Shown here one piece after another: positions 1,236-40,476 of a DNA stretch of 64,000 nt. The first letter of the stretch is position 1. The number at the start of each line of letters is the position of its first letter. The notes beneath the pieces are model-generated. The model ran no database searches. It was not told where the DNA came from and was given only the letters and a program-made list of their open reading frames with translations. Source of the DNA: Macrostomum lignano (lineage: Eukaryota); assembly GCA_002269645.1 (NCBI GenBank), contig NIVC01001778.1, positions 174,401 to 238,400 on the forward strand. Reading direction: 5' to 3'. The position numbers and the translations under genes are program-made.

Positions 1236-1804
1236 CCGCCCCATCACACCGAGAGGATCAACTCCAAAGCAAGCACTAGGGCAATACCGATCGAAAATCG
1301 GGCGAGATTTAAGAACTGCCGCTTGAAAGTTGACCAGCCATGCAGCCCCCCAAAACGCGGTTTTTCATCAGTTCCACTCGCTTTCCTCCTGACCCCGGCG
1401 CGGCCGCCGCCTTATAACCCCCCGCCGAGCCCAAAGTCATTAGCCCACCGCAGCCGCCACCCCCACCCCCGCTGCCTCAGGTGCTAATTGTTTCCTAATG
1501 ATTATTTGCTCACTTGCCCATAACCGCTTTACCGTTCGGCACTCACTTCAAGTTTCCACACGCGGGATTCGTCACACTTGCCAATTTCTCACATCTCGGA
1601 ACTTGAAAATCTTTTTCGAACTAAGAAAAATTGATTTTATAAGCTCGTTCAGGTGTTGGAAATTTTTCAAAGGACCCGTCATTAGGGAAAGCAATTTGCG
1701 GTTAAGGGATTTTTTAGAGTTAGCAGCAAACTTTTTGGAACCCTCTCTGCCCGCGATCAAAGCGATCAAAATTGAATCAAGGAACCGAAAATAGACGTTA
1801 GGGA

Positions 1805-2109
1805 GTAGAGAGCAGTGAGAAGGAGAGAGTAGACAGTAGACAGACAGCAGAGAGAGGACAATAAACAGTAGACAGTAGACATTAGACAGTAGACACTGAG
1901 AGTAGACAGTTGAGAGTAGACACTGAGAGTAGACAGTTGAGAGTAGACAGTAGACAGTTGAGAGTTGAGAGTAGACAGTAGAGAGTAGACAGTAGACAGT
2001 AGACAGTTAAGAGTTGAGAGTAGACAGTTGAGAGTTGAGAGTAGACAGTAGACAGTAGAGAGTAGACAGTTGAGAGTTGAGAGTAGACAGTAGAGAGTAG
2101 ACAGTCGAA

Positions 2110-2143
<34 letters not shown>

Positions 2144-2179
2144 GAGTAGACAGTAGACAGTAGATAGTTGAGAGTTGAG

Positions 2180-2220
<41 letters not shown>

Positions 2221-2650
2221 GAGTAGACAGTAGACAGTAGATAGTTGAGAGTTGAGAGTAGACAGTAGAGAGTAGACAGTAGAGAGTAGACAGTAGACAG
2301 TAGATAGTTGAGAGTTGAGAGTAGACAGTAGACAGTAGAGAGTAGACAGTAGAGAGTAGACAGTAGAGAGTAGACAGAAGAGAGTAGAGAGTAGACAGAA
2401 GAGAGTAGAGAGTAGACAGAAGAGAGTAGAGAGTAGACAGAAGAGAGTAGAGAGTAGACAGAAGAGAGTAGAGAGTAGACAGAAGACAGTAGAGAGTAGA
2501 CAGTAGACAGTAGAGAGTAGACAGTAGACGGTAGAGAGTAGACAGTAGAGAGTAGAGAGTAGACAGTAGAGAGTCGACAGTAGACAGTAGAGAGTAGACA
2601 GTAGACAGTAGACAGTAGAGAGTAGACAGTAGAGAGTACAGAGTAAATAG
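1805..2650. repeat. Heptamer-based minisatellite (AGTAGAC/AGTAGAG)
   Basis: Direct tandem units; these produce the spurious YSLLSTV ORF. Confidence 0.95.
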
Positions 2651-3089
2651 TTGAGAGTAATGTCACAAAGCTATTGCATTATCGCAGTTGGCCAGTGGTA
2701 AAAGCCAGTGACAAGCTAAATTCAATCCAGTTTTTATCAGTTCAGATCGTGGCAGTCCTGTTTCCCAAGCTCGCCCCGAAAATGGAAAGTTGAGTCAGTT
2801 TAACAACATTTCTGACTGCCCAACAAAAACCCAAATTCTTCAGTCTGTTCCCGAATTTCGCTTTGAAGGTGAAATGGAAAGTTAATTGAAAACGAAAAGT
2901 TTCCATTTTTTTCGTTTCCCTGCTCCAGTTGAGATGCAGTGAAAAAATAAGCGAAATTAGGCTTGCACAGGGACCGAGCCAGGACTTCTGGATGAGAAGC
3001 CTGGACTGGATCGGCAACCGGGAAAGTAAAAGCGTCAAAAAGCGGAAATTTCGCCTACAATTTTGCCTAAATGACACTCATGGTTGTGG

Positions 3090-3468
3090 AAGTAGAGAGT
3101 AGAGAGCAGAGAGTAGAGAGTAGAGAGTAGAGAGTAGAGAGTAGAGAGTAGAGAGTAGAGAGTAGAGAGTATAGAGCAGAGAGTAGAGAGCAGAGAGCAG
3201 AGAGTAGAGAGTAGAGAACAGAGAGTAGAGAGCAGAGATCAGAGAGTAGAGAGCAGAGAGTAGAGAGCAGAGAGTAGAGGGCAGAGAGTAGAGAGCAGAG
3301 AGTAGAGAGTAGAGAGCAGAGAGTAAAGAGCAGAGTAGAGAGCAGAGAGTAGAGAGTAAAGAGCAGAGAGTAAAGAGCAGAGTAGAGAGCAGAGAGTAGA
3401 GAGTAGAGAGTAGGGAGCAGAGAGTAGATAGTAGAGAGCAGAGAGTAGTGAGCAGAGAGTAAAGAGCA
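3090..3468. repeat. Heptamer-based minisatellite (AGAGTAG/AGAGCAG)
   Basis: Direct tandem units. Confidence 0.95.
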
Positions 3469-4487
3469 TTTGTTATACGGGTAACTTTCCAACAAAACCC
3501 AGTTTCCAATCTGGAATCCTACACAGTGGTCCCCGAACAGATATATTTTCGTTGAATTGGTTTTTTGACTCCGTTTTTTTACTGCGCAAATCTTTTTTTG
3601 TGATAGCGTGCAGCACTGCGGCTTCTTACAACGGCAGGTATTCAGTCAGCAAATCAAGATGGTTAATTATTTTAGACGCTTTTTGCTTCGCTCCAAAGTT
3701 TTGCACGCAAATGTTCCCGCGGTGGTCAGAAAGTCATTCAAAATAGCTTTGTATGCACACTATAACAACTTCTGCTAAATGTTCGATAATTATTCATCGA
3801 ACAGGAGGAGGCAGATTGAATCAGTTGATTTCGGCAAATCTGTCTCTCAACTTACCTGTCCGCGAGGAATATTGCTTGCTAATAATAATAATTATAATGC
3901 TTTCTTAACACGATAGAAGCGCGGAGGCTGGGGCTCGACAATTTGATGAAGCATAACGATAGGAAGACGATTCTGGAGGCAGGTCCATCCATCTCAGTTA
4001 ATTTAGGCCCCCAGGCAGATTGTCGCATTCAGGTGGCAAAGCACTTCAAAAGATTTGCTAGCTTTTTATGCGCATACTATAACAAAACACAACAATAGCG
4101 GCTTCTGTGGTGGTGATGAGGCGTGACCAAGGTAGAGTGGAGTCTGGGAATGTAGCGTGTTACTCTTTTGATTTCGGGTGACAAAAATTCCATTATAGGG
4201 CGAGCGCAAGGTTCGATTGTTGTTATCAGTTGAAATTAGCTCAGACATCTGGAGGCTGACGGGCAGACAGGCAGGTCAGACATTTCACAGCTGGACTCAA
4301 CTTGGAGATTAAATGCCATTAGGCAAGTAGAGCACAGAGGCGCTGGGTGTGTCGTGCGACCTTTGGCTGCGTTGTTCATTGGTTTCCTTTTGTGAGCCAT
4401 TAGCCTGGCTAATTGAGATTGAGAATCTGTTCAAAGCTTGGAGACTCGAGTGTGGCTTTTTTACTGATTTAGGCTGCATTAAAACTA

Positions 4488-5100
4488 CAGTGACTGAGAA
4501 GAAAGAAGAGTGACTGAGAAGAAAGTAGAGTGACTGAGAAGAAAGTAGAGTGACTGACGAGACAGTAGAGTGACAGAGGAGACAGTAGAGTGACAGGGGA
4601 GGCAGTAAAGTGACAGGGGAGACAGTAGAGTGACAGAGGAGACAGTAGAGTGACAGGGGAGGCAGTAAAGTGACAGGGGAGACAGTAGAGTGACAGGGGA
4701 GACAGTAGAGTGACAGGGGAGACAGTAGAATGACAGGGGAGACAGTAGAGTGACAGGGGAGACAGTAGAGTGACTGAGGAGACAGTAGAGTGACAGGGGA
4801 GACAGTAGAGTGACAGGGGAGACAGTAGAGTGACTGAGGAGACAGTAGAGTGACAGGGGAGACAGTAGAGTGACAGGGGAGACAGTAGAGTGACTGAGGA
4901 GACAGTAGAGTGACAGGGGAGACAGTAGAGTGACAGGGGAGACAGTAGAGTGACAGGGGAGACAGTAGAGTGACTGAGGAGACAGTAGAGTGACAGGGGA
5001 GACAGTAGAGTGACTGAGGAGACAGTAGAGTGACAGGGGAGACAGTAGAGTGACGGAGAAGACAGTAAAGAGATGGGAAAGAAAGCAGAGTGACAGAGCA
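4488..5100. repeat. 20-bp minisatellite GACAGTAGAGTGACAGGGGA
   Basis: Direct tandem units with a GACTGAGGA variant. Confidence 0.95.
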
Positions 5101-8094: not shown

Positions 8095-8555
8095 AACATC
8101 TCAAAGACACCTCTGACACAGACATCTCAAAGACACCTCTGACACAGACATCTCAAAGACACCTCTGACACAGACATCTCAAAGACACCTCTGACAACAG
8201 ACATCTCAAAGACACCTCTGACACAGACACCTCAAAGTCACCTCTGACACAGACATCTCAAAGTCACCTCTGACACAGACATCTCAAAGACACCTCTGAC
8301 ACAGATATCTCAAAGACAACCCTGACACAGACATCTCAAAGACACCTCTGACACAGACATCTCAAAGACATCTCTGACACAGGCATCTCAAAGACACCTC
8401 TGACACAGACATCTCAAAGACACCTCTGACACAGACACCTCAAAGTCACCTCTGACACAGACATCTCAAAGACACCTCTGACACAGACATCTCAAAGACA
8501 CCTCTGACACAGACATCTCAAAGACATCTCTGACACAGACATCTCATCTGACACA
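8095..8555. repeat. 26-bp minisatellite ACAGACATCTCAAAGACACCTCTGAC
   Basis: Direct tandem units immediately 3' of the TRP gene stop codon. Confidence 0.95.
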
Positions 8556-8579: not shown

Positions 8580-11500
8580 TTATTCAGGTAAGTCCAAAGC
8601 TGACTGGAACTGGCTTCCATCGCCCGTAGCATCCTCTGAAGAACTTTCCGTCGCGTGAACCTGCAGCTGGTAGTTTGGTGGCGGAGGGACTTCCAACGTT
8701 TGCTGCTGCTGCTGCTGTTGTTGTTGCAGAATCTTCTCCAGCATCGAGCGCAGGTCTTTCATCTGATCGTCCAACGAGGCCAAACGTCGTTCCACCGCTT
8801 GAATCGGCGGCTGCTGCTGCTGCAGCTGCTCAGCCGGCGTCGCCGCCGCCGCAGTCTCCCCGGTTGACTCGGTGAAGTGCCGACTTCGATTCGACTTCAC
8901 CAAACCCAGGTAGAGTTCGGCTCGTTTCGATCGCATAGCAACGGCCTGGACAGCCAGGTAGTAGACGAACTTTAACACGGCGGACTCTCTGCGGACTCCG
9001 CGCAGACGGCGAAGCATCGTGGCGCGGTGACGACCCAGTCTGGTGTTGTGAAGGCAGCGAGGCGCCCGCAGTCGTTGCAGCAGCAGGTAGACGGCCTGCA
9101 GGATGTTCAGCGGTGGCGGCAAGGCCAGACGACGTTGAAATTCTTCGACGGTGTAGTGACGACTGTAGTACCTGGTTGAGAAGGGGTTCGGGTGTTCCTA
9201 TGTCACGCGTGGGTCGAAGCTGGGTCGAGTTTGGTCAAGGATGGGTCAAGGATGAGCCAAGGATGGGTCAAGGATGGGTCAAGGATGGGTCAAGGATGGG
9301 TCAAGGATGGGTCAAGGATGGGTCAAGGATGGGTCAAGGATGGGTCAAGGATGGGTCAAGGATGGGTCAAGGATGGGTCAAGGATGGGTCAAGGATGGGT
9401 CAAGGATGGATCAAGGATGGGTCAAGGATGGGTCAAGGATGGGTCAAGGATGGATCAAGGATGGGTCAAGGATGGGTCAAGGATGGGTCAAGCACAAACC
9501 AAAAGACTCTCACCACACCGATGTGCTATTCCCGTGGATCTGGTCAACAGTCTTGCTGAACAGGGCAATCAGCAAGTTCAACAGCAGCACGTTGGTGACC
9601 AGGATGAACAGGAAGTTCAGCGCGGTCGGCACCAGAACCCGACCGATTTCGTGTGGACAGCCGGCCTCCTCGCAGGCGAGTCCTTTGAGCTCTTCGACAA
9701 AGAACTCGCCTACGGTGATGTAGAAGGCCTTCTCGATGAGGTTGACCCACACGCGCTGCATCTCCCAGCGGCTGCTGTGAAGGTCCTCACAAGTCTCGTT
9801 ACCCTTAGCCGCGGGCGCAGACCTGCGCTGATAGTAGCCGTTGGGGTACAGCAGCGACTGCAGCGAGACGCCGAAGGCGGCCATGAAGATGCCGAGAACG
9901 AGCAGGAATGGCAGCAAATCGGTGACGAGCATCTCGCAGATCATGCGAATTTTCGGCCCGATGGCCTTGAAGATGACGGCGTAGAACAGGAGGCGGCAGT
10001 ACAGCAGGAACAGGCAGACGCAGTACAGAACTCTGATCCAGTAGTACCGGCTGTCCACGAAATCTGGGACGCAGGACATACGCTCCACCTGGGAGTCGTA
10101 TGGGATTGGAAGGAAAGATGTAGAATTGGGGAACTTTTTCTGGAAAGATTGAAGTGTCAGAGACTGTTCTAGGGTGTCAGAGACTGTTCTAGGGTGTCAG
10201 AGACTGTTCTAGGGTGTCAGAGACTGTTCTAGGGTGTCAGAGACTGTTCTAGGGTGTCAGAGACTGTTCTAGGGTGTCAGAGACTGTTCTAGGGTGTCAG
10301 AGACTGTTCTAGGGTGTCAGAGACTGTTCTAGGGTGTCAGAGACTGTTCTAGGGTGTCAGAGACTGTTCTAGGGTGTCAGAGACTGTTCTAGGGTGTCAG
10401 AGACTGTTCTAGGGTGTCAGAGACTGTTCTAGGGTGTCAGAGACTGTTCTAGGGTGTCAGAGACTGTTCTAGGGTGTCAGAGACTGTTCTAGGGTGTCAG
10501 AGACTGTTCTAGGGTGTCAGAGACTGTTCTAGGGTGTCAGAGACTGTTCTAGGGTGTCAGAGACTGTTCTAGGGTGTCAGAGACTGTTCTAGGGTGTCAG
10601 AGACTGTTCTAGGGTGTCAGAGACTGTTCTAGGGTGTCAGAGACTGTTCTAGGGTGTCACTCTCGGACAGTCCAAGATTAGTAACCAACGCTAACCTCCG
10701 CTCCGGTGGTGAGGTCGAGTCCCAGCTTGGCAAAGAAGCCCAGGTAAAACAGGCCAATGCTCGCCAGATCCATCACGTTCCACATGTCGCCAAGGTAGAT
10801 TAGCGGACTTTTACAATTGCGACACTCGATGGCCTCCTCGACAACCAGGCCGACAAACCAGACTGCTATGAGAGTCTCCAGACGGTTCAGTCTCGAGTGG
10901 AAATGGAAGAGCACAGTGCTAGTGAGCAGGGCCAGCAGCACCAGGTGTGACAGCAGGTGGTACTGGAACTTCACGGACGGAGAGCTCAGAAACTGGCCGA
11001 GGCTGGACAGTGCTCTGCGCAGATCCGAGCCCGATCTGCAGTCGCTGTCGTCGCCGCGGTCCAGCTCGTTCAGCAGCTCCTCGAGGCCGTGGTCGTTGCT
11101 GGCGAAGCCGACGCCACCGCCGATGCCACCGCCGCTGCTTCTGCCGCTGCCTTCGCCGACTGACTGCGGACCTCGACGACGCCCCAGGTTGCCGCGGGAC
11201 CCGCTGATCGACGGCGGCTCCTCTTCTTCCTCTTCTTCTTCCTCCTGGTTGACTTCGTCGGGAGCATCGGCTCCGGCTTCGGGTTTGTCGTTGAATTGCT
11301 CGTCTCCTTCGACATCCAGTTGGAGCGGCTGATGCCTGTCTTCTGGCGGCGCTGCCTGGTGGTGGGGTTGGTTGGGGATTTTAGATTTGAGATGGGAATG
11401 GGGATGGGGGTGGGGATGGGGATGGGGATGGGGATGGGGATGGAGATGGGGATGGGGATGGAGATGGGGGCGGCGATGGGGATGGGGATGGGGATGGGGA

Positions 11501-14500
11501 TGGGGAAGGGGATGGAGATGGGGATGGGGATGGGGATGGGGGGCGGCGATGGGATGAGGATGGGGATGGGGATGAGGATGGGTTAGAGATGGGGATGGGG
11601 ATGGGGATGGGGTGGGGATGAGGATGGGGATGGGGATGGGGATGGTGATGGGTGATGGAGGATGGGGATGGAGATGGGGATGGACACATGAAGCAGGCCT
11701 CAAAAAAGCAACACAATAATCAACCACCCTCCCCATACCTCCTCAGACATCCCATCGGATATCAGGACGCCGTCCTTCTGCATGGCTCGGCAGCGTTTCC
11801 TCATCGGCTGATGCGGCTGCTCCCCGCAGTTCCGTTGAATTCCCGGTTGATGACTCAACCGCCAACGCTGCTCCCAGCGTCGTCGCTTGAGCTTGATCAC
11901 AGCGTAGAAGGTGACGACATTCAGCGGCGGCAGCAGAGCCACCGCGGCAAGCAGCTGCCGCTTCACAACGAAAGCCGGCGACCGCATCCGGTCAGGCCCA
12001 CGGACTCGAAGTAGCAGCCGAACCAGTCTTTGTCCAGCGCGTCCTGACAGCAGGCCAGCGACAGGAAGTTGCCGCACTTGGCCGCCGCTGCCAACGACAC
12101 GACGCTGTGATTGCCGAACGGGGTGAGCTTGAGTCTGATGAAGTCGCAGGTGACCGTCTTTCTCTGCGAACGATCGTTGATGAACACCTCTTGCAGGGCA
12201 GCTTTCAACAGTTGCTCCATGGAGTCGGCGCGCTCTTCCAGGCCTTCGCGCACGCCTGTGGTGATGACTGACAGCCGGCAGAGGCTGCGGAGCACCTTCA
12301 CTGCGTACAGGCCCAGCGGGATGATGTCAAACTGGCGCATGCACAGGTTGAGAAAGCTGCGCTGGTATCTGGTTGGTGCAGTTTTTTCACATAAAATTGC
12401 AGCTTAATCTACTTGCAGTAGCGTAGTGCACGTTTCTAATAAAAAAGTTGAAATTTAATTCGCTTTTAAAGTGATCAAAGATTTGCCATTTAAAATTTCT
12501 ACAGAAAATCGACTTAAATTTCTCATAGACTTTCTTGATTGTTCATTACATTAGCTAAGCTAAATTGGTCATAGATTAGCTAGCTAAATTGGTCATAGAT
12601 TAGCTAGCTAAATCGGTCATAGATTAGCTAGCTAAATTGGTCATAGATTAGCTAGCAAAATTGGTCATAACGTTTTTTTATAGTCAGTAATTCAGGTTGT
12701 GCTAGCCAGTAATTAAATTATGTCCAATTTACAGAGATTTCGTTAACCAAGTCTAGCTCAGAGAGGGTTAATTACTTCTTAGTGCATTGCAACCGTAGCT
12801 AGTAGGGTAGCTAGTAGGGTAGCTATTAGGGTAGCTGATAGGGTAGCTGTTTGGGTAGCTGTCAATCATTTTCTTGAGCATTCGTTGACTCTAATTCGCT
12901 CCCGACTTCAATCGGGCACCAAGCACTAGCCGCAGGCAAGGGAACACGGGATATTTCGCCACTCACTTCCCAGTGATGACTGTCCAGACAATGTAGGTGC
13001 GAATAGGATTGAGGAAGATGCGGAACTGATTAATCTGGCACAGCCGTGCATCCGGTTCGGCCGTCTCGATGCCGGTGAGGTGAGCCAGAAAGTACTGCAG
13101 ACTGCGCCAGAACGCGTCCTCGTTGCTGAAGTCCAACTGTTCTCGAACATAGGTCCACACGCCTTGGCCATTCTCCTCGCACTCCTTGTACAGGGTGAAC
13201 AAGTAGTTCCGCTCGATTCGCTGGGTAATGTCTACAGGCGTCACGTCACCCATGACGTGCATGAGCACCTGCATGAGGTCGAAGTTCTCTTCGATGTAGG
13301 CTTTCTTGGTGAATAGCTCCATGAATCTCTGTCCAGACTCGCCCTCCATCAGCTTTCGGCTCAGACAGAACTCCGGCATCTGACGCATCAGTTCAAGGAA
13401 TTTCTTCAAGTTCTGCTCATTGATGCACTCCTCCAGGGCTTTGATGCTGAAGGCCTGACGAACCGTTTCGCTGGCGTGGTGACTCTGAATGAGACCGAGG
13501 CGTCTCAGCTCCTGTACGATCAGCAGGAAGCTGCGACCGGTGCTGTCAATCATTTTCAGCATCTCGAAGACGTCCCGGACCAGAGATAGTTGAGCTTTGG
13601 GCGACTCGGTTGGGGTAATCGAGGTCGCGTCCTCGGAGCGGCGAAACATTCGGACGAGTTTGAACTGGAAGATTCGGTGCAGCAGCTGAGCGTTGTTGCT
13701 TTCCAGCAGGAGGTCCAGCGGACGGACCTGCGGAAATAGCGGAGTCAACCGATCGAATGAAGATTTAAGCTCCGAGGATGGTAAACTCTCAGGATGGTAA
13801 ACTCCCAGGATGGTAAACTCCGAGGATGGTAAACTCTCAGGATGGCAAACTCCCAGGATGGTAAACTCCCAGGATGGTAAACTCCCAGGATGGTAAACTC
13901 CCAGGATGGTAAACTCCCAGGATGGTAAACTCCCAGGATGGTAAACTCCCAGGATGGTAAACTCCCAGGATGGTAAACTCCGAGGATGGTAAACTCCCCG
14001 GATGGTAAACTCCCAGGATGGTAAACTCCCCGGATGGTAAACTCCGAGGATGGTAAACTCCGAGGATGGTAAACTCCCAGGATGGTAAACTCCCAGGATA
14101 GTAAACTACGAATTCGTTGCATAACCCAACAATCTCTACAAACGACAGACAAGTTCTTGACGCAGGCCCGGTACTTAGATTTCTTGCGACGATTCAAACC
14201 GAATCGCAACTCTCGCGTCTCACCTCTTTAAAGTCTGAATCGTACAGGCTGACCGAATGTCTCAGCAGGAACAGCACGGATTCATTCAGCTCCCGTTCGA
14301 CGCACGCGTGCATCAGAGTTCGACCGTCGGAGTCGCGTGAGCCAAAGTGCCTGACGGACCAGTCGGGCTCGGCCTGCAGCAGCAGCTCGGCAGTTTCCGC
14401 GCTCTCAACCAGCAGGGCGCGGTCGATCGGCGCCTGATTGGCGTCGTCCAGCACGGCTGCTTTGGCGCCGTTTTCTAGCAAGATTTTCACCGTCTTTTTG

Positions 14501-14590
14501 CACACCCTGCTGAGTCGACCGGAGGCGTAGTGAAGCGGAGTGCGACCCCTGCGGTTAGCGGTTCGGGTCGGCACCTGCCTGTCTTTCTCC

Positions 14591-14623
<33 letters not shown>

Positions 14624-14657
14624 CCTGTCTGTCTGTCTGTCTGTCTGTCTGTCTGCC

Positions 14658-14690
<33 letters not shown>

Positions 14691-14693
14691 GCC

Positions 14694-14734
<41 letters not shown>

Positions 14735-16486
14735 GCCTGCCTGTCTGTCCGTCTTTCTCAAAGTAAAAATCCCATACTTAAATTAGCCACAAATACAAAA
14801 GTCAGAGAGCACATTTCTCGACATTTGATGGATCAACACAAGACCAATTATTTAAAGTACCGGTAGAGAAAATTAACTTAGGGACTCCAGCAATCCAATC
14901 GAATTTTATATTGCCAAAAAATACCTTAATGAATTGTTTGCTCAGCTCAGCTAGCTTATGAGACTCAGTCTCACTAATTAACCCACACTAGGCGTATACA
15001 TAGCCTACTGCTAGTCGAATTGTAGATGAACCTACTTAATTTATTGCCTACTTAATTAACAGAGCGGCTGTCAATGGACAGGTAGATAAGATTGAGTTAT
15101 CCTAACAGCTAGGGCTCAGTGCTCCGATGCTGACTGTTTAAACAAAGCAATCTTCACTCGCAGCAAGGATCAATAAAATACTCTACGTGGTCTATAATAC
15201 TGAGCAGAGATGGGGTTGAGAATGCAGAGCTCATTCAAAGTAGAAGGGCATTTTTAACGCCATTCGCGGTAGAGGATTAATCGACTAAGTGGTTCTTCTT
15301 TTAGAAGCAAAATTTCAGTCAAGCGGGTTTCATTTGCTGACACATTCATCGTGATAAATGTGCTGCCGAATAAATGAAACAAAATTTAATTACAATAAAT
15401 TGAGAAACCACTATAATTATGGCTTGAAAAATCTTTGCAATTAAATAGACACATTCTTGCACATTTTAGACACAGCCATGCACCTTTGGACACAAATCCT
15501 GCACCTTTGGACACAAATCCTGCACCTTTGGACACCATCATGTACCTTTAGACACAAATTCTGCACCTTTGGTCACAATCCTGCACCTTTGGACACAATC
15601 CTGCACCTTTGGACACAATCCTGCACATTTGGACACAATCCTGCACATTTTAGACACAACTCTGCACCTTTGGACACAATCCTGCACATTTGGACACAAT
15701 CCTGCACATTTTAGACACAACTCTGCACCTTTGGACACAATCCTGCACATTTGGACACAATCCTGCACATTTTAGACACAACTCTGCACCTTTGGACACA
15801 ATTCTTCACGTTTGGACACAATCCTGCACATTTTAGACACAACTCTGCACCTTTGGACACAATTCTTCACGTTTGGACACAATCCTGCACATTTTAGACA
15901 CAATCCTGCACATTTGGACACAATCCTGCACATTTTAGACACAATCCTGCACATTTGGACACAATCCTGCACATTTTAGACACAACTCTGCACCTTTGGA
16001 CACAATTCTTCACGTTTGGACACAATCCCGCACATTTTAGACACAACTCTGCACCTTTGGACACAATCCTGCACATTTTAGACACAACTCTGCACCTTTG
16101 GACACAATTCTTCACGTTTGGACACAATCCTGCACATTTCGGACACAATCCTGCACATTTCGGACACAATCCTGCACATTTCGGACACAATCCTGCACAT
16201 TTCGGACACCAGTTGAATTCCAATGAATTCGCAATACAATGGGACAGAGCAAGCACCACTAAGCCGCTCACTTCTTGTCGGTAACGTTAGGATCGGCTCC
16301 CCTCTCAATCAGCAGGTACTCCAACAATTGGTTCCTGCTGTGCAAGGCCAGAATGTGCAGGCCTCGCCGACCGCAGTTGCCGCACAACGGACCGTCCACG
16401 CCGACGTCCCGCAGTACGGCGTCGATGTCGGCGCGATTGCCCGACGCGAAATTGGCAGCTCGACGTTCGCAGTTGCTGGCGGACAT
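8580..16486 (-). CDS. TRP cation channel, TRPM-like (MHR3/4, 6 TM, TRP helix, coiled coil) with N-terminal ankyrin repeats; ~1238 aa, 8 exons
   Basis: Exons 16272-16486, 14224-14548, 12967-13727, 12002-12368, 11739-11960, 10696-11355, 9514-10088, 8580-9171. All introns are GT-AG, phases are consistent, total 3717 nt. Motifs: ANK DPNVTDKKGRTPLHYA; MHR4-like NPIRTYIVWTVITG and FGNHSVVSLAAAAKCGNFLSLACCQDALDKDWFG; S1 FLSSPSVKF; S3 DMWNVMD; S4-S5 GPKIRMI; pore YITVGEF; S6 NVLLLNLLIALF; LPPPLNIL; coiled coil. The start codon and the 41-nt intron are inferred. Confidence 0.88.
9225..9491. repeat. 11-bp minisatellite GGATGGGTCAA (TRP intron 7)
   Basis: Direct. Confidence 0.95.
10154..10659. repeat. 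Perfect 20-bp minisatellite GTGTCAGAGACTGTTCTAGG x~25 (TRP intron 6)
   Basis: Direct; no variant units seen. Confidence 0.97.
11390..11683. repeat. (GGGATG)n hexamer repeat (TRP intron 5)
   Basis: Direct. Confidence 0.95.
12555..12670. repeat. 24-bp tandem AGCTAAATTGGTCATAGATTAGCT (~5 copies)
   Basis: Direct; TRP intron 3. Confidence 0.85.
13775..14105. repeat. 16-bp minisatellite GGATGGTAAACTCCCA (TRP intron 2)
   Basis: Direct. Confidence 0.95.
14575..14755. repeat. (TCTG)n microsatellite (TRP intron 1)
   Basis: Direct. Confidence 0.95.
15455..16210. repeat. 20-bp minisatellite TGGACACAATCCTGCACATT with higher-order variants (TRP intron 1)
   Basis: Direct. Confidence 0.95.
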
Positions 16487-16625: not shown

Positions 16626-16964
16626 GCCTTTTTGACAGGGTACGAGCTATAAACGTATGCATGATTCCTATTATACGATGATATATACTGAGTAAATGTA
16701 CCACAACATGCAGATACGGGGTGCATAGGCAGAGCTGTAGATAGAGATATATAGAGCAATGGAGGTCTAAACTTAGAACTTGGAGCGGCTATAACTCCAC
16801 AAAAGACCTATTTTCAGGCTGCTATTGGCTGACCACAGTTTCTTTCAGTTAATGCACAGAATTTAGGCAAGTTTCAGAGCGGTAATTATTTCATCTAGAG
16901 ACCGTCTTTGGAGATCGTGCTGGTTTCGTTTAAAGGGCGCGACATCTCGTTCGACGGGAAGCGC

Positions 16965-17775
16965 TATTTCATTTGAGAAAGGCACCATTTCATTTGAGAT
17001 TGGCGCCATTTCATTTGATGGAGGCGCCATTTCATTTGAGGGAGGCGCCATTTCATTTGAGGGAGGCGCCATTTCATTTGAGGAAGGCGCATTTCATTTG
17101 AGGGAGGCGCCATTTCATTTGAGATTGGCGCCATTTCATTTGAGGGAGGCGCCAGTTCATTTAGGAGTGGGAGGCGCCATTTCATTAGAGAGGGGGAGGC
17201 GCCAGTTCATTAGAGAGGGGGAGGCGCCGTTTCATTTGAGATTGGCGCCATTTCATTTGAGGGAGGTGCTATTTCATTTAAGGGAGGCGCCATTTCATTT
17301 GAGGAAGGCGCATTTCATTTGAGGGAGGCGCCATTTCATTTGAGATTGGCGCCATTTCATTTGAGGGAGGTGTATTTCATTTAAGGGAGGCGCCATTTCA
17401 TTTGAGATTGGCGCCATTTCATTTGAGGGAGGCGCCAGTTCATTTAGGAGTGGGAGGCGCCATTTCATTAGAGAGGGGGAGGCGCCAGTTCATTAGAGAG
17501 GGGGAGGCGCCGTTTCATTAGAGAGGGGGAGGCGCCATTTCATTAGAGAGGGGGAGGCGCCAGTTCATTAGAGAGGGGGAGGCGCCGTTTCATTAGAGAG
17601 GGGGAGGCGCAATTTCATTAGAGAGGGGGAGGCGCCATTTCATTAGAGAGGGGAGGCGCCATTTCATTAGAGAGGGGAGGCGCCATTTTATTAGAGAGGG
17701 GGAGGCGCAATTTCATTAGAGAGGGGGAGGCGCAATTTCATTAGAGAGGGGGCGGCGCCATTTCATTTGAGGGTG
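16965..17775. repeat. 21-24-bp minisatellite GAGGGAGGCGCCATTTCATTT
   Basis: Direct; the unit drifts to AGAGAGGGGGAGGCGCCATTTCATT toward the 3' end. Confidence 0.95.
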
Positions 17776-20014
17776 CCATTTTGAACTGTAACTGAGACGC
17801 CCGTTATTTCCCTAGCCAGATAGCCAATTAATCGTAGAACTCCAGGTGCTGGAGCAGCTCAATTGTTTATTTAGGCCATTTTAACCCTTCAGCATGGGGC
17901 AGTGGACAGACTGGCCTTCCCGCACAGAAGCGCAATTCAGGCCGGCCCCCTGCTGTGCTCAAAGTGAGCGGTACTAAAAATTTTATATGACTCGCCACTT
18001 ATTGAAGTTGTGTATGCTCTTGGTCTGGGCTGTACCTGTATGCGAGTGCAGTCTTAACAACAACACTCACTGTTAGATTTAGTTTATACAAAGCCTTTTT
18101 ATCTTCAACAAGGCACTATCACCTCAGTGTGTGTGTGCTACAATTAGCTCACTTGATTGTACAGCCTCTCACGCTACACAGAAAATTAATTCCATTCATA
18201 TACAATTCTGCCTACTTAAAAGAAACGTATAAAACACGTATTTAAGAATACGTATTTTAGGTTCAAAAAGGAGAGAAGTAAAAATGTAATATTCATTTAT
18301 GGGCATTGGGAAAAATTTTAACAGAGAAAATATCAATAAAACGCTTATCAAGTCTCATTTATCAGTAATTATTTGATTCCAACTAGCGCACTTGTAAGCG
18401 CGCAATGCATACTACTAACAGCTTTGCGTGCAAATTTAGCTCGTAATAAATGTATTTTTTAACGAAAACAGTTTTAAATATTAGGAACCCAGAAGTTATG
18501 AATTTTAAGCGAATAGCAAGGCAAGCATAATAAGAAAAAATACAGTTAGACAGGAAAAACACAAAGCTAAGAATATGCATGAAAGAATATAACATATTTT
18601 TGCGCCAACACAGTTTCGTAAATCTTTGACAGCGACAGTTACAGGAAACAAAAAAATCGTGAATATTGCTAACAAACAATTTGCAAGGCTAACAGCTACA
18701 ATCAACCTCTGCAGTTTCATTGATGAAAAATCGTTTATTCATAGTTGAAATTCCAATTTCCAACTAGTAGGCAAACAGTTACAACAATAAAAACCGTGTT
18801 CACTAGTAGGTTAATTAAAATATTATAATGCAAGATGTGACTGTGATACAATCAGTTGCGAGAAAGAAGTTGACAGCACACATAATAATCAATACACTGT
18901 TAGCAGAAAACTGCAACTGCATTTCCTATCTTCACAATAAGTATATCAACTTCATTTAAGATAAAGTACACGTGAAAATTTAGATTTCTAGATCGCTAAT
19001 AATAGTCTATACTCTATATAATAGTAATAAAAAAATAGGGTTAGTGTTAATATTAGGCTACGGGGTAAGGAAAGAAGGGGGGTTAGGGCTCCTCTCCATA
19101 GCCAACCACCCTATTCGGGCCGGGCGGGCAGAGGGATAGGGTGGTTAAGTGGTTTAAGCACGGCTAGGAATGGCTGCGGCTAGGGCTAATGGGTGACTGA
19201 CGATAAAATCGATAAAATTCAGCCCCCCTCCCCCACTGAGACCCCTGAAAGCTGACGTACAAATAGTAGAGTTAATAGGGGTAGAAAATAGGGGGAGGGG
19301 CGACGACACTAATAAAATCGATAATAATAAAAAAGTCTGCTAAACGATTAAATGACTTAAGAGAGCGTGGGGGTTTATTGGCCGACCCAAATAGATCGAT
19401 AAATCTCGACCAAACTCCACACGGTCTGAATGAGACGGAATTATTGTTAGTTGTCCTAAATACTGGAACCACTTAATTAAATTAATTTGTACTCTTACGA
19501 CTACTGACTGCTGAGTGCTAACCAAATAATTTGGGGAGAAAGTCAGTTATTAAGTACTAAACAAGTTCCGCTGTTTAAATTTCCAATTTAAAGTAAATAG
19601 AAAATTAGAAACCAGGCGAATATTTGCTTCGCAGAATACTACCCCATATAAATTGGTGATTAAACAACAGAACAAACAAACTGAGGCAAAACAAAAAAGC
19701 AAGCAAACACGCTTCAGTTTGTGTACTTTGGCACACAGACACGGACAGCTAAGCAAATCGGGATTAAATGTGTTGCATTTATAGAGTTCAACATTAAGAA
19801 ATTGTAGGGGAATCGACGAAATTCCCAACGAATTATAATCCAAAACAAATGTTATAAATTTATTTATTTATTTGATTTGATTATTCCAATGCATAGGTCA
19901 CAGGGCAGTCAGAGAGATTACTTTACAATACGAATCCGATTGGCATATTTGAAAACATCCACCAATGCACCCAACATAGCTACATTAGTGACAAACTAAA
20001 TACGCTTGATTCTA

Positions 20015-34671
<14,657 letters not shown>

Positions 34672-36451: not shown

Positions 36452-38424
36452 TTAACTATCTTGGCCCAGATAAGCTGGGTAATCCAGAGAGTTTTGCGAA
36501 GCAATTTTCTCAGCCAAAGTTTCATTGTTAGCCGACACGATGAGCTTGCTCTGCGGAGTAAGCGGCTCGCAGATTCTCAATACAATCGATCGCGGCTTGC
36601 AACTCAGCTTGCGAAACAATGCCATCGACCTCTCCGAATAGTCTGCCGAGGAAAGCATCAGAATGTACCGGTTCTCAATGTCGTGCTCCTGCACTTGAGC
36701 AACTACGGACGACAGAATACCGACTACAAAGTTAATGAATAGAATCGGCACAAATAGCACGTAGAATATGTGGGTCACGTTCAGGTCGATGCGATCGTTC
36801 TTCGGTACAAATATCGTCGTGTTAACAATGTTCAAAGAAACTAGAAATGTCTCGTAGAAGGCGGCTAGAAACTGAGGAATTGTATCCGGCCTGCTAGTAG
36901 TAGAATTAGTTGAGCTAGAGAAGATAAAGTTGGACTGAAACATTCGCGCGAAGATGGCCATAAGTACCAAATAGAGGACTATAAAGAAGGTGAACGCTGT
37001 TAAACTGTTGTAGAAACTGCTCATTAAAGTAGTCAGTGGCCGCAACAGGCGAAGATAGCAGACAAGAAGACAGGCACTAGACAGCAACAGAATTATGTTG
37101 CATAGACCAGTGAAAGTGTAAATAAAGTGACCGAATAGTTGGCAAGCGCGTTCAGCATCCAAGTAGATCCAAAACAGACCGACAGTGGCAGGAAACGAGA
37201 CTAAGGTAGGCAAGTTCCACGTCAACATGTCATAGTAGTACTTCCTTGGCCATTTAGGATAATTCACTTGGTTCCTGAAATATTTATCAAAAAATGGCAA
37301 AAACGTCTTAACAAATTGACGATTGCAAACCAACCGAATGGCACAAGAGTGAAATGGCATTACAAACGTACTCACCTTATATATTCCTTGCGAACAACTC
37401 CATACAACATAGAAAATGTTCCAAGCGAAGTGTACGCAAGCCAAACCGAGAGAACTACAACTGTTCCAATAGGAGTATCGGTATTCACGCCGGCGCATCT
37501 AAACTTGATGTAATCGTTGAGAATGCTGCCAGTGAACACAACAGTAAACACAGTGAGCAGAACACCGACGAAAAGAATGGTATAGAGAAACATCTTATTC
37601 GACTCAAAAAGCAGGTCAACCCACTGTTTCCAGATGAAGTTGTGCCTAAAAATTCCGATTTTCTTGAGCTCCGGCAGGGTTGATTCGCCGTACAAATCAA
37701 GCAGGATGCAGATTGGGCTGGTGAAATAACACGGATTTTCGCCAACGAGTTCGGACACATCCATAGTGATGTGCTCAGTAATGCCGATAGCCTCCGACTT
37801 TACAAGACAGTTGGGTGAGAAATAGTAGATGACGTACTCAACATAGTTTGCAAGACCGAGGTACACACCCCAGCTCAATGGACTCATGCCGGCAACACTT
37901 CGAGAATTAAGCATAACAGTATGCTGTTTCTGAGTGAAAAGCACACGATGGAACAAGCACACCAAGTCAAAAATTTCTGTCTTCGAACCTGTTTCCAATC
38001 GGCGCTTGGATGAAAAACTAAGTGCTCCAAACAAATGATGATAAGCGTTTAAGCCGTGCTCAACAATGCTGCTAAAGTCAACGCCAGACTCATTCATGTA
38101 AATCAGACACTTCTGTGCGTTATAAAACATCGCGATAAAGAAAGGGTTGGTAGGAAACGGATGCACATTATTGCACATAGCAACAGTGCTAGCGAACTGC
38201 GGACTGCATTCAAGCCAAACACCACCTGTGTCTCTGCTTTGCAGGAACTGCTTCCAGTTGATGTGCCTTGAAAAAACTTCTAAGTCTTCAACGTTGTCCT
38301 CGGCGAGACACTTGACGAAAGCTAACCAGTCCTCGTTGGTTGGTAAAAAGTCCAAAATGTTGTAGGGACATTCGATCATTTCCGGTGTATCCAACTTGGG
38401 CAAGATAGAATTTTTGTGCTTCAT
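36452..38424 (-). CDS. Divergent TRPV5/6-like (ankyrin + 6TM) cation channel, paralog A, ~623 aa, 2 exons
   Basis: Exons 37376-38424 and 36452-37274; 101-nt phase-2 intron GTGAGT...TTTCAG. Ankyrin-like NPFFIAMFYNAQKCLIYM and GMSPLSWGVYLG; six hydrophobic segments; pore FYETFLVSLNIVN; S6 ILFINFVVGILS; TRP-helix-like tail ending in ER. Confidence 0.8.
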
Positions 38425-40476
38425 TGCGAATCGAGTTTTGCTTTGCTGTAGTTGTCGGTTGCCAAAAATATTCCGCGTACAGTTGAAAACAACGTTCTGT
38501 GTTCCGATATTGACTTTTAGGCGCCAGTTTATAGGGCAAGCTAATCAGATTATATCATTGGCTATGCTTGGCTCTCCAGTAATCACATGACAGTGATTGG
38601 CTGTGTTACTCATAACCACGTGAAAATGTTTATTCAGCAACTAATTCAGCAAGTTTTTCGTTTGAAATCAACACTAGCTGTTAGTGTAAAATCAAGTGGC
38701 CAGATCAGAATGCCAGACAGTATTTGGGGGCCCTTGATAAATTCACCTGGCTTTGTGAAACAATAAAACTGTCTATAGAATCTGCTATTGTATTATAATC
38801 CGAAGGCTAGGCAAACAGCGGCCTGGAAAAGTGGACCTGAGTGGGCAATCAATAATCAACTATGCAAATATTTACCTTCCGAGCCAGTTGGGAAACCGAG
38901 AGCTCACTCTGAGCTAATCCGCTTAACTAGCACAGCATCCGCTGTGTGCCAGCCAGAATAACAAAGAAAAATCATGCGACGATCGAAGTTTATTTCTGTT
39001 GGCATGGCAACGGATCGACTGGCGTAGCAAAATGCGAATCAAACTGGATTTACAAGCTATCCAAAGCCGTGCATTGATTTAATTATTGATAAGGTGAACG
39101 GAAGTGCTTGACTAGGACTATGAATAACTAGGCTCCCTGGGCTGGAGACGATAATATTAATTAGACTAGAAGTTCTTCCATCAAAAAGGGACAGCTAGAA
39201 AAGCTATTAAGATAAAAGCTGTTTTCGTCTCCCTAAAGTCATACAACGAAAGCAACGTAAAATAACGTCTCCAACCTAGCAACTACTAGAACTTTTTTCT
39301 TTATCATACATATGAAAAACAGATACTTAATAAAAAATAGACCGAAGCTATAACTCTGAGCTGCATCTCTTCCTACACTCTCGGTTAATGCTTGAATATT
39401 ATTATAGCCAGTTTTAATTATCACTATCTAGTTCTTATGAAACTTTATGGACAGCTACATGTAATCTAAAGTAGCAGCTGTTGAAAGAGTTCACACTGCC
39501 CGAAATTCTGACTGTTCCACTTGTGACCTGGTGATCAAATATTGATAATACGCATCTGACTGATTGATCAAACACTCTTGTTTTAAAATATCAAGTGATT
39601 GACACTCGGTAAAGCACTGAGCAGTATGCCAAAAAAGAATTCATTGATTGGTAGCAGGCATTAATGTCAAATATTTGCGACATAGGAGCGTGGCCAAGGG
39701 ATTGTTGCAATTCTAAGCAATATGGGCGGGGGTTTAGACCCGATTGAGACGGCATAGAACTGCATCGATTAATTACACTATAAGTAGCTACACTCACAAT
39801 TTAGCTACTGAGTGTACTTCGAGAAAATCCACAATCCATTTATCCAGAAAAGAATTGTACAGCTTTCGATAGCTTTGTTTTATCAATGTTTATTTTTAAA
39901 AGAGAATTATTTTAGAACACGACAAAGAGCATTTGGAAATATTTCGTAGTTAAATGTAAACGCGAGTTTAATAACAGACTATAAGTTTCTATCACAATTT
40001 GCAATTGCATTTCCGTCATGCATGCTTGCTTTATAGATTTGAATCAGAATAATTTGCCTGATTGCAAAACTGCAAAACGGTACATTGCAAAAATTCTGTC
40101 CGATTACGCAAAGTGAAACTGTAGAATCAAGGATAGGAACTATGCTGAGCTACAAACCATATAGGTTTTTTGTGCCTCTCGGTTATTCAACTTCACTATC
40201 CAGACTAGAAATATTATTCGGTCATATCCGGATTTTCGATCGGGTAAGGACATATCAGAATTCGGATAACAAACATCCGACTAAATTTTTCGTCTAATTT
40301 TAGCGCAAACGCAACGGTTGGTTTTTTAAGCCCTTTCTGAGCACACACAACATTGAACAAAGAAATTCTATACTATTACTATTGCATCACGTAATAGATT
40401 TACAGAGCACAGAATGCCACTATGTTTAAAAAAAACTGAGTGAATTTTCAATTGTATCAATTTGCGACGAAATATG

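What the first reader, a model, noticed from the sequence alone, without database searches (positions are those of the whole stretch)
8580..16486. TRPM-type channel whose N-terminus is ankyrin repeats: a chimeric TRP architecture
Seen: in-phase splicing joins about 4-5 ankyrin-like repeats (exons 1-3; one repeat is completed across the exon 1/2 junction, DPNVTDKK|GRTPLHYA) to an MHR3/4-like region, TRPM-like S1-S6, pore (YITVGEF), LPPPL motif and coiled coil. Established: TRPM channels lack ankyrin repeats and start with MHR1/2 (SLOG fold), whereas ankyrins typify TRPC, TRPV, TRPA and TRPN. Here the space for MHR1/2 is taken by ankyrins, and there is no NUDT9-H domain. Inference: domain shuffling or an undescribed TRP lineage with different gating inputs.
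Basis: partly seen in the sequence, partly recalled or inferred. Interest (0 to 1): 0.75.

Follow-up and report, generated by a model that had tools for sequence, protein, structure and literature searches.

The report
Flatworm ankyrin-headed TRPM-like channel gene
This is a real gene of the flatworm Macrostomum lignano for a TRPM-type ion channel whose usual N-terminal domain is replaced by ankyrin repeats, but the same design is already published for the schistosome drug target TRPM_MCLZ, so this is a new family member and not a new kind of channel.

Summary
A 7-exon, minus-strand gene (16486-8580, all GT-AG) encodes about 1252 aa: five clear ankyrin repeats plus a partial N-terminal one, an all-helical MHR3/4-like region, TRPM-type S1-S6, the pore FYITVGEF, a TRP helix, LPPPL and a probable coiled coil. 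There is no SLOG/MHR1-2 and no NUDT9-H. Two ankyrin repeats span exon junctions. RNA-seq-guided public models of the same gene (BOX15_Mlig000356 g1/g2) join the ankyrin exons to the rest.

The window is Macrostomum lignano assembly Mlig_3_7. It is probably a homopolymer assembly error.

The "undescribed lineage" reading fails. Schistosome TRPM_MCLZ (Smp_333650) was cloned and shown to work as a channel, and is described as lacking MHR1/2-SLOG and carrying N-terminal ankyrin repeats. That group has been called "TRPM-like".

In my TM-region tree all ankyrin-type, SLOG-less sequences form one clade (94% bootstrap). It holds the window gene, ten other M. lignano paralog groups, and trematode, cestode and monogenean proteins.

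What may be new is modest: the family predates parasitism, is expanded in a free-living flatworm, and coexists with ANK+SLOG+TRPM+Nudix proteins.

Verdict: new member of a known kind, interest about 0.33.

The parts
8580..16486 (-). Whole coding region of the ankyrin-headed TRPM-like channel gene (Macrostomum lignano BOX15_Mlig000356, g1 copy): 7 exons, about 1252 aa after repair of one frame break
   Evidence: Gene model. Identical to public fragments P0154 (residues 562-1252) and P0153 (87-516). Locus identified as GCA_002269645.1 contig NIVC01001778.1.
16272..16486 (-). Exon 1: start codon, partial N-terminal ankyrin cap, ANK1, and the first residues of ANK2
   Evidence: Ends AA|gtgagc, and the split codon is completed by the G of exon 2.
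14224..14548 (-). Exon 2: rest of ANK2, then ANK3, ANK4, and the start of ANK5
   Evidence: Public fragment P0003/P0153 starts inside this exon and continues into exons 3 and 4.
12967..13727 (-). Exon 3: both helices of ANK5 (VRPLDLLLESNNAQLLHRIFQF...), a family-specific all-helical linker, and the start of the MHR3-like region
   Evidence: ANK5 aligns with the last ankyrin repeat of all paralogs. AlphaFold helices 183-190 and 193-207.
11739..12368 (-). Exon 4: MHR4-like region (CMRQFDIIPLG ... ALDKDWFG), pre-S1 segment, and the start of the disordered loop
   Evidence: PF25508 hit at E 3.9e-4. Family profile versus PDB TRPMs. Foldseek top 50 hits are all TRPM.
11995..11999 (-). 1-bp frame break (one base missing from the GGGCC run) within exon 4
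   Evidence: The g2 copy P0151 reads through in frame. The NCBI annotation of this copy starts only at the ATG at 11987.
10696..11355 (-). Exon 5: acidic and Gly-rich disordered loop, then S1, S2 (VVEEAIEC) and S3 (MWNVMDL)
   Evidence: Residues E818, E821, N837 and D840 align with the Nematostella TRPM2 Ca2+ site E893, Q896, N918 and D921 (PMC5976436).
9514..10088 (-). Exon 6: S4, S4-S5 linker (GPKIRM), S5, pore helix and filter FYITVGEF, S6, and the start of the TRP helix
8580..9171 (-). Exon 7: rest of the TRP helix (W|YYSRHYTVEEF), LALPPPLNIL, rib-helix-like segment, probable coiled coil (8727-8804), Q-run, and TAA stop
   Evidence: Junction NSTSVW|YYSRHY confirmed by P0002 and P0154. Coordinates.
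9233..16209 (.). Intronic minisatellites, a different array in each of the six introns (for example a 20-mer x25 at 10154-10659 and GATGGG x49 at 11391-11683)
   Evidence: [quoted passage not shown]

Best explanation
The locus encodes a subunit of a tetrameric, TRPM-type, probably Ca2+-permeable non-selective cation channel. It belongs to the flatworm 'TRPM-like' group whose characterised member is schistosome TRPM_MCLZ.

Shown here:
- Five to six N-terminal ankyrin repeats occupy the place of the SLOG/MHR1-2 domain.
- They are followed by a family-specific helical linker, an MHR3/4-like helical domain, a TRPM-type S1-S6 with TRP helix and LPPPL, and a short C-terminus without NUDT9-H.
- The window gene sits in the same well-supported clade as the trematode, cestode and monogenean ankyrin-type proteins.

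Inferred:
- Both known ADP-ribose sites of TRPM2-type channels (MHR1/2 and NUDT9-H) are absent, so gating cannot be nucleotide-driven in that way.
- The five residues of the TRPM2/4/5/8 cytosolic Ca2+ site are kept (E818, E821 in place of Gln, N837, D840, E1066), and the S1-S4/TRP cavity is intact. The likely mode is therefore Ca2+-dependent or Ca2+-sensitised opening controlled by a ligand in the voltage-sensor-like-domain cavity, as for meclonazepam on TRPM_MCLZ.
- The ankyrin layer would then form the bottom cytosolic tier and act as a scaffold or protein-interaction input.

The 1-bp frame break in this copy is most likely a homopolymer error of the PacBio-based assembly.
For: One gene:
- ANK2 spans the exon 1/2 junction and ANK5 spans the exon 2/3 junction.
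- RNA-seq-guided models P0151, P0003 and P0153 join exons 1-4, and P0002 and P0154 join exons 5-7. The annotation method is described in PMC5730564.
- Homologues carry ANK and channel in single ORFs. These include a cestode protein named TRPM7 in UniRef (A0A0V0J4K6, 1413 aa) and an intronless 1072-aa ORF on a Logan contig.

TRPM-type:
- (top 60 PDB hits all TRPM, best E 9e-80).
- (Foldseek of residues 205-559: top 50 hits all TRPM, TM about 0.5).
- (paralogs show Ank_2 + PF25508 + Ion_trans and no LSDAT_euk, whereas canonical M. lignano TRPMs show LSDAT_euk + PF25508 + Ion_trans).

Same clade as the parasite proteins:
- NJ tree of 132 TM regions: all 18 ANK-type sequences plus 3 N-truncated fragments form one clade at 94% bootstrap, with no SLOG-bearing member.

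Link to TRPM_MCLZ:
- It is the only schistosome TRPM without SLOG, is 1380 aa long, was formerly labelled 'M7', and is conserved in other parasitic flatworms (PMC11731825, PMC7138929, PMC10788528).
- The trematode and cestode clade members are 1270-1413 aa, and two are named TRPM7.
- In the O. felineus protein, the S4 Tyr967 to TRP Arg1141 spacing is 174, the same as Sm H946 to R1120.

Ca2+ site: alignment, with residue roles from PMC5976436.

Frame break as artefact: the g2 copy is intact at this site and has its own break at a GGGG run about 40 codons later. The assembly is Canu on PacBio reads with Pilon polishing.
Against: - I could not retrieve the Smp_333650 sequence, so the link to TRPM_MCLZ rests on literature descriptions plus clade membership, not on a direct alignment.
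- The window protein is a long lone branch. It is 29-34% identical to its nearest relatives and joins the other M. lignano paralogs at only 49% bootstrap.
- On its own its MHR hit is below Pfam's cutoff (21 vs 27 bits).
- The tree is neighbour-joining, has no TRPC/TRPN/TRPS outgroups, and the sister group is unresolved (<20%).
- The coiled coil and the Ca2+/ligand gating are inferred from sequence only.
- The frame break could be real, which would make this copy non-functional.
Confidence: 0.78

Rival explanations
1. This genomic copy is a young pseudogene. The 1-bp deletion at 11995-11999 is real, so the copy makes at most a truncated ANK-MHR protein, or a 691-aa N-terminally truncated channel starting at Met562. 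The near-identical g2 copy would supply the function.
For: The frame break is in the sequence. An older-assembly prediction (P0001) shows the same reading, FESVGLTGC. M. lignano DV1 carries duplicated chromosomes and many redundant gene copies (PMC5730564). NCBI annotated only the 691-aa half for this copy.
Against: The break lies in a G3C2 homopolymer context. The g2 copy has a different break, also in a homopolymer (GGGG). The two assemblies share the same PacBio reads, so they are not independent. The two copies differ by only 2 of 616 residues, with no other lesion.
Confidence: 0.17
2. These are two separate genes, a small ankyrin protein (exons 1-2 or 1-3) and an N-terminally short TRPM-like channel, wrongly merged by the first reader.
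For: Reading through the exon 2 donor reaches a stop after 14 codons. There is an in-frame Met in exon 3 (MFRRSED). Some public predictions are fragments.
Against: ANK5 is split by intron 2, and its second half lies in exon 3. P0151 and P0003 span the exon 1-2-3-4 junctions. More than 15 homologues from M. lignano, trematodes, cestodes and an unknown organism have ANK and channel in one ORF.
Confidence: 0.03
3. Ankyrin heads were acquired independently in M. lignano and in parasitic flatworms, so the window gene is not related by descent to TRPM_MCLZ in its architecture.
For: The window protein is a long lone branch. N-terminal ankyrin repeats also occur on SLOG-bearing, Nudix-bearing TRPMs elsewhere in the tree, which shows that ankyrin repeats have been attached to flatworm TRPMs more than once, or were attached very early.
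Against: ANK-type, SLOG-less sequences are monophyletic at 94% bootstrap. The ankyrin repeats and the linker that follows align repeat for repeat across M. lignano and neodermatan members.
Confidence: 0.04
4. It is really a TRPN/TRPA/TRPC-type (natively ankyrin-bearing) channel whose TM region merely resembles TRPM.
For: NOMPC is the top whole-protein PDB hit by summed score, and TRPA1 and NOMPC appear in the Foldseek list of the full N-terminus.
Against: Those hits come from the ankyrin repeats. The NOMPC TM domain scores 32 bits, against 75-90 bits for TRPMs. The post-ANK region aligns continuously with TRPM MHR3/4-TM-TRP and folds like TRPM. LPPPL and the WxxxR TRP box are TRPM-like.
Confidence: 0.02

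Closest known systems
Schistosoma mansoni TRPM_MCLZ (Smp_333650; target of meclonazepam) and its orthologues in other parasitic flatworms ('TRPM-like' group)
   Same: N-terminal ankyrin repeats instead of MHR1/2-SLOG, TRPM-type S1-S6, TRP helix, short C-terminus without NUDT9-H, and similar length (1252 vs 1380 aa). The window gene falls in one clade (94% bootstrap) with the trematode, cestode and monogenean ankyrin-type proteins (PMC10788528, PMC11731825, PMC12861061).
   Different: The host is a free-living macrostomid. The window gene has 7 exons, against 3 for Smp_333650. It is only about 30-34% identical in the TM region to the parasite proteins and is not their one-to-one orthologue. M. 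lignano has at least 11 paralog groups, where schistosomes have one. Ligand sensitivity is unknown.
Canonical TRPM channels (e.g. Nematostella TRPM2 6co7, TRPM3, TRPM7, choanoflagellate TRPM2 chanzyme)
   Same: MHR3/4-like domain, pre-S1, S1-S6, VGE/YGE-type filter, TRP helix, LPPP motif, VSLD Ca2+-site residues, and probable C-terminal coiled coil.
   Different: No SLOG/MHR1-2 (Pfam; all-helical model), no NUDT9-H or kinase, and an extra linker of roughly 120-145 residues (about 211-330 to 355) after ANK5 with no TRPM counterpart.
Natively ankyrin-bearing TRPs (TRPN/NOMPC, TRPA1, TRPC, TRPV)
   Same: An N-terminal ankyrin-repeat domain precedes a 6-TM TRP channel.
   Different: TM-domain similarity is much weaker (NOMPC 32 bits vs TRPM 75-90 bits). 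In the window protein the ankyrin domain is joined to the channel through TRPM-specific MHR3/4.
TRPS (soromelastatin, ced-11-like)
   Same: Sister family of TRPM with a related TM and TRP domain.
   Different: TRPS has SLOG and Nudix domains and no ankyrin repeats (PMC7306681). Its placement relative to this clade was not testable here because no labelled TRPS sequences were available.

Membership tests
TRPM family in the strict (melastatin) sense | N-terminal MHR1/2 = SLOG domain (Pfam LSDAT_euk) | tested here: not met
   No LSDAT_euk or LSDAT_prok hit even at E<=1. The AlphaFold model of residues 1-603 has ankyrin repeats and helices only. Canonical M. lignano TRPMs P0018 and P0020 do hit LSDAT_euk.
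TRPM family in the strict (melastatin) sense | MHR3/MHR4 helical region (Pfam PF25508 TRPM2-like domain) | tested here: met
   The window protein alone scores E 3.9e-4 and 21 bits, below the 27-bit cutoff. Paralogs score 28-46 bits, above the cutoff. The family profile aligns from residue 448 of Nematostella TRPM2 onward. Foldseek of residues 205-559 returns only TRPMs in the top 50.
TRPM family in the strict (melastatin) sense | TRPM-type S1-S6, TRP helix and LPPP motif | tested here: met
   the best PDB matches are all TRPM. TRP box WYYSRH, and LALPPPLNIL.
TRPM family in the strict (melastatin) sense | C-terminal tetramerising coiled coil | tested here: inconclusive
   A heptad-like stretch at 1179-1204 aligns with similar stretches in paralogs. 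PF16519 gives no hit, and I ran no coiled-coil predictor or multimer model.
Flatworm TRPM-like / TRPM_MCLZ group | Ankyrin repeats N-terminal, SLOG absent, no NUDT9-H | tested here: met
   The group is described in PMC11731825 (section 3.1) and PMC12861061 (Fig. 1 legend).
Flatworm TRPM-like / TRPM_MCLZ group | Phylogenetic clustering with parasite TRPM_MCLZ orthologues | tested here: met
   94% bootstrap clade with Opisthorchis, Dicrocoelium, Fasciolopsis ('TRPM7'), Schistocephalus ('TRPM7') and Protopolystoma proteins. Caveat: that these are TRPM_MCLZ orthologues is inferred from the literature and from residue spacing. The Smp_333650 sequence itself could not be fetched.
Flatworm TRPM-like / TRPM_MCLZ group | Forms a cation channel opened by a VSLD-pocket ligand such as (S)-meclonazepam | not testable with these tools
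   Needs heterologous expression. Only conservation of the S1-S4/TRP cavity and of the Ca2+-site residues could be shown.
TRPN / TRPA / TRPC / TRPV | TM domain of that subfamily | tested here: not met
   The NOMPC TM domain scores 32.4 bits, against 75-90 bits for TRPMs. No non-TRPM channel appears among the 60 best profile hits.
TRPS (soromelastatin) | SLOG plus Nudix domains and no ankyrin repeats | tested here: not met
   No SLOG and no Nudix, with ankyrin repeats present. Definition from PMC7306681.

The most novel reading that the evidence does not exclude
The ankyrin-headed TRPM-like channels are an old, platyhelminth-wide family, not a parasite peculiarity. They were already present before Macrostomorpha and Neodermata split. 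They have expanded to at least 11 paralog groups in free-living M. lignano, and the window gene represents a third deep lineage.

The architecture may have arisen stepwise. Ankyrin repeats would first have been appended to a complete SLOG-MHR-TM-Nudix channel, a form that still exists in M. lignano (P0055, P0203). SLOG and Nudix would then have been lost.

This would contradict the general statement in TRP-evolution papers that the TRPM/TRPS lineage is ankyrin-free.
Probability: 0.35. Interest if true: 0.5.

Novelty: new member of a known kind. Interest (0 to 1): 0.33.

Why it matters
The only characterised channel of this design, TRPM_MCLZ, is an anthelmintic drug target whose natural activator and physiological role are unknown.

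Macrostomum lignano is a free-living, transgenic-tractable flatworm. A whole set of relatives in it, including this divergent one, would give an experimental system for three questions: what the ankyrin head does, how the channel gates without either ADP-ribose site, and which pocket residues set drug sensitivity.

It also flags a gap in the literature. Broad TRPM/TRPS phylogenies (PMC7306681, PMC13143021) did not sample platyhelminths and call the lineage ankyrin-free.

For genome annotation, the public record for this copy covers only the C-terminal 691 aa because of one probable homopolymer error.

Tried and rejected
- The search for homologous proteins (word-indexed) was nearly useless here. 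The post-ANK region gave no hit, the family profile A1 returned only a self fragment, and the TM region of the O. felineus protein returned only a monogenean fragment. As a result I never obtained Smp_333650 or labelled TRPS, TRPC or TRPN sequences. The tree therefore has no outgroups, and the alpha/beta/gamma/TRPS placement is unresolved.
- The 47-nt GT-AG mini-intron (12001-11955) as the repair for the exon 4 frame break was rejected, because the g2 copy reads through in frame and the 16 residues align with paralogs.
- My first hand-made ankyrin HMM was too insensitive. I replaced it with Pfam scans and jackhmmer.
- Supplementary files of the TRPM_MCLZ papers are not held, so there were no accession lists.
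- Foldseek with the whole N-terminus was swamped by ankyrin proteins. I re-ran it on residues 205-559 alone.
- I tried to identify the organism of the Logan contig DRR639838_5415 from its sequence. Composition was uninformative.
- P0019 (S. rodhaini) as a possible TRPM_MCLZ orthologue was rejected, because it carries a NUDT9-H-like C-terminus and no ankyrin repeats.

Full report
**What is in the sequence**

The region 8580-16486 holds a minus-strand gene. I rebuilt it from six-frame translation and splice-site inspection. It has seven exons, all flanked by GT-AG: 16486-16272, 14548-14224, 13727-12967, 12368-11739, 11355-10696, 10088-9514 and 9171-8580 (TAA stop).

Every intron is largely filled by its own minisatellite. 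This fits the source organism, in which simple and tandem repeats account for 15% of the genome (PMC5730564).

Either a 47-nt GT-AG mini-intron (1236 aa) or one extra base (1252 aa) restores the frame.

**Source and independent support for the model**

An exhaustive HMMER search of 1.84 billion representative proteins found three fragments that are 94-100% identical. They belong to Macrostomum lignano. By exact look-up the window is assembly Mlig_3_7 (GCA_002269645.1), contig NIVC01001778.1.

The two near-identical genomic copies are annotated as BOX15_Mlig000356g1 and g2.
- PAA62464.1 (g2, P0151) contains exons 1-4 in one reading frame. It reads YFESVGPDRMRSPAFVVKRQLLAAV across the window's frame break.
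- PAA64147.1 (g1, P0154) is the window's own copy. It is annotated only from Met562 (window 11987) to the stop, and it is 100% identical to my model.
- Other fragments span the exon 2/3, 3/4 and 6/7 junctions exactly as I spliced them.

These NCBI models come from a genome-guided RNA-seq transcriptome assembly (PMC5730564), so they are transcript evidence and not ab initio guesses.

Inserting one C at 11996-11995 reproduces all public fragments. The g2 copy has its own break about 40 codons downstream, at a GGGG run. The assembly is Canu on PacBio reads polished with Pilon. I therefore consider both breaks probable homopolymer errors (about 0.8). The remaining probability is that this copy of a duplicated chromosome region is a young pseudogene.

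**Domain anatomy**

Pfam finds Ank_2 at 43-134 and Ion_trans at 766-1033. It finds no LSDAT/SLOG, no NUDIX and no TRPM_tetra.

AlphaFold2 on residues 1-603, with an 18-sequence family alignment, gives mean pLDDT 71.6. It shows five ankyrin helix pairs (42-61, 76-97, 112-131, 150-168, 183-207) and a low-confidence N-terminal cap. After them comes an all-helical region with no Rossmann-like SLOG fold. Foldseek superposes the ankyrin part on DARPins at TM 0.85 and 2.4 A.

ANK2 is split by intron 1 and ANK5 by intron 2. ANK5 aligns with the last repeat of every homologue. The ankyrin exons therefore cannot be a separate gene.

The post-ankyrin region alone (205-559) was modelled separately (pLDDT 72, with 90 or more over most of 380-550). 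Its 50 best PDB matches are all TRPM channels: TRPM3, TRPM2 chanzyme, TRPM7 and Nematostella TRPM2, with E 2.5e-5 to 3e-4 and TM about 0.5.

At the sequence level:
- A profile of the family's post-ankyrin region matches Nematostella TRPM2 (6co7) at E 9e-80. It is one alignment from residue 448, just after MHR1/2, to the TRP helix. All 60 best hits are TRPMs.
- The window protein alone hits PF25508 (the MHR3/4 'TRPM2-like domain') at E 3.9e-4, below the cutoff. Its paralogs pass the cutoff.
- With the single sequence, TRPM TM domains score 75-90 bits and the NOMPC TM domain 32 bits.

**This is a family, not a one-off**

The next-best database hits (29-34% identity) all show the same arrangement: Ank_2 + PF25508 + Ion_trans without LSDAT_euk. 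They are:
- many M. lignano paralogs;
- proteins of Opisthorchis, Dicrocoelium, Fasciolopsis ('TRPM7') and Echinostoma (trematodes);
- Schistocephalus (cestode), a 1413-aa protein named 'TRPM7' in UniRef;
- Protopolystoma and Cichlidogyrus (monogeneans).

An intronless 1072-aa ORF of the same type lies on a contig from sequencing run DRR639838, of unknown organism.

I built a neighbour-joining tree of 132 non-redundant TM regions (280 columns, 200 bootstraps). All 18 ankyrin-type, SLOG-less sequences and three N-truncated fragments form one clade at 94%, and no SLOG-bearing sequence falls inside it. Within the clade:
- the neodermatan sequences plus some unknown ones group at 87%;
- ten M. lignano paralog groups cluster at 99%;
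- the window protein is a lone branch that joins the M. lignano cluster at only 49%.

The sister group of the whole clade is unresolved (<20%). I had no TRPS, TRPC or TRPN outgroups.

**Comparison with the literature**

General TRP-evolution papers state that TRPM and TRPS lack ankyrin repeats (PMC7306681). The species list of one of them contains no platyhelminth (PMC13143021), and the other mentions no platyhelminth taxa in its main text (PMC7306681).

The parasitology literature has already described this design.
- Park et al. cloned Schistosoma mansoni Smp_333650 from cDNA and expressed it in HEK293 cells. They showed a cation channel opened by (S)-meclonazepam, named it TRPM_MCLZ, and drew a long N-terminal domain of ankyrin-like repeats. 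They note that it is present in other parasitic flatworms and was formerly called TRPM7-like (PMC10788528; PMC7138929).
- Sprague et al. say it lacks the NH2-terminal MHR1/2 or SLOG domain and has ankyrin-repeat-like modules instead. They also say it lacks any C-terminal enzyme domain, is 1380 aa long, and is the only schistosome TRPM paralog with this layout (PMC11731825).
- A 2026 paper proposes calling the group 'TRPM-like' (PMC12861061).

The trematode and cestode members of my clade match that description in length, in their old 'TRPM7' label and in architecture. In the O. felineus protein, the spacing from the S4 Tyr to the TRP-helix Arg-Thr is 174, as in Sm H946 to R1120.

I could not fetch the Smp_333650 sequence itself. 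The equation of the parasite subclade with TRPM_MCLZ orthologues is therefore a strong inference and not a direct alignment. None of the papers I read mentions free-living flatworm members of this group. M. lignano appears only for TRPM_PZQ (PMC9910428).

**How it most likely works**

Shown: the architecture above, and the conserved TM, pore and TRP elements.

Inferred: it is a tetrameric, non-selective, probably Ca2+-permeable channel. Two lines of reasoning apply.
- The two ADP-ribose sites of TRPM2-type channels (MHR1/2 and NUDT9-H) are both missing. That rules out that mode of gating.
- The five residues that build the cytosolic Ca2+ site of TRPM2/4/5/8 are E893, Q896, N918, D921 and E1110 in Nematostella TRPM2 (PMC5976436). 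They align with E818, E821, N837, D840 and E1066 here.

Together with the intact S1-S4/TRP cavity, which is the meclonazepam site in TRPM_MCLZ, this points to Ca2+-dependent or Ca2+-sensitised gating modulated by a pocket ligand. The ankyrin tier would be a structural or protein-docking layer beneath MHR3/4.

**Verdict**

I file the gene as a new, divergent, free-living-flatworm member of the known TRPM_MCLZ / 'TRPM-like' kind. Three points remain of modest interest:
- the age of the family;
- its expansion in M. lignano;
- the M. lignano proteins that carry ankyrin repeats in front of a complete SLOG-MHR-TM-Nudix channel. These hint at a stepwise origin, which I could not test properly.

Noticed in passing
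window 11995-11999 (exon 4) and the annotated start at 11987: A 1-bp frame break lies in a GGGCC run. Because of it, the public annotation of this copy (PAA64147.1) covers only the C-terminal 691 aa, and the ankyrin and MHR half is unannotated. The sister copy g2 breaks at a GGGG run about 40 codons later.
   Followed up: yes
window 8096-8546, 9233-9492, 10154-10659, 11391-11683, 12538-12669, 13766-14107, 14591-14758, 15448-16209, 16956-17773: Each of the six introns and both flanks carries a different minisatellite, with periods from 4 to 61 bp and up to 49 copies. The 20-mer array in intron 5 has 25 perfectly identical copies.
   Followed up: partly
proteins P0055 (Mlig003066), P0203 (Mlig025325g2), P0038 (unknown species); not in the window: These M. 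lignano TRPMs have N-terminal Ank_2 repeats in front of a complete LSDAT_euk (SLOG) + PF25508 + Ion_trans + Nudix-like architecture. They sit in a 99%-supported Nudix subclade, away from the SLOG-less ankyrin clade. They may be an intermediate form, an independent gain, or a gene-model fusion.
   Followed up: partly
window ~20000-34000, minus strand: The neighbouring gene is a UDP-glucose:glycoprotein glucosyltransferase (Glyco_transf_24, UDP-g_GGTase and Thioredoxin_12 hits). A 1565-aa UGGT is annotated upstream of the channel in the public record.
   Followed up: partly
window 36455-38544 and 40480-42432, minus strand: Two tandem paralogous genes encode products of about 650 aa. Each has a conserved N-terminal half (…NPFF[VI]AMF[FY]NAQKCLI[FY]M…) and a hydrophobic, apparently multi-TM C-terminal half, and each is interrupted by a stop or an intron. 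Neither has a Pfam hit, and the one C-terminal half I searched (the 40480-42432 copy) has no significant PDB sequence hit.
   Followed up: partly
locus L002 (Logan DRR639838_5415) 1298-4516: An intronless 1072-aa ORF has the same ANK + TRPM-like channel layout and groups with the neodermatan subclade. The organism is unknown, so the family may reach other flatworm orders or beyond.
   Followed up: partly
window 60810-61499 (+) and 62804-63787 (-): Two long ORFs near the window's end: a Cys-rich 230-aa ORF with a signal-peptide-like start, and a 328-aa ORF. Neither has a Pfam hit.
   Followed up: no
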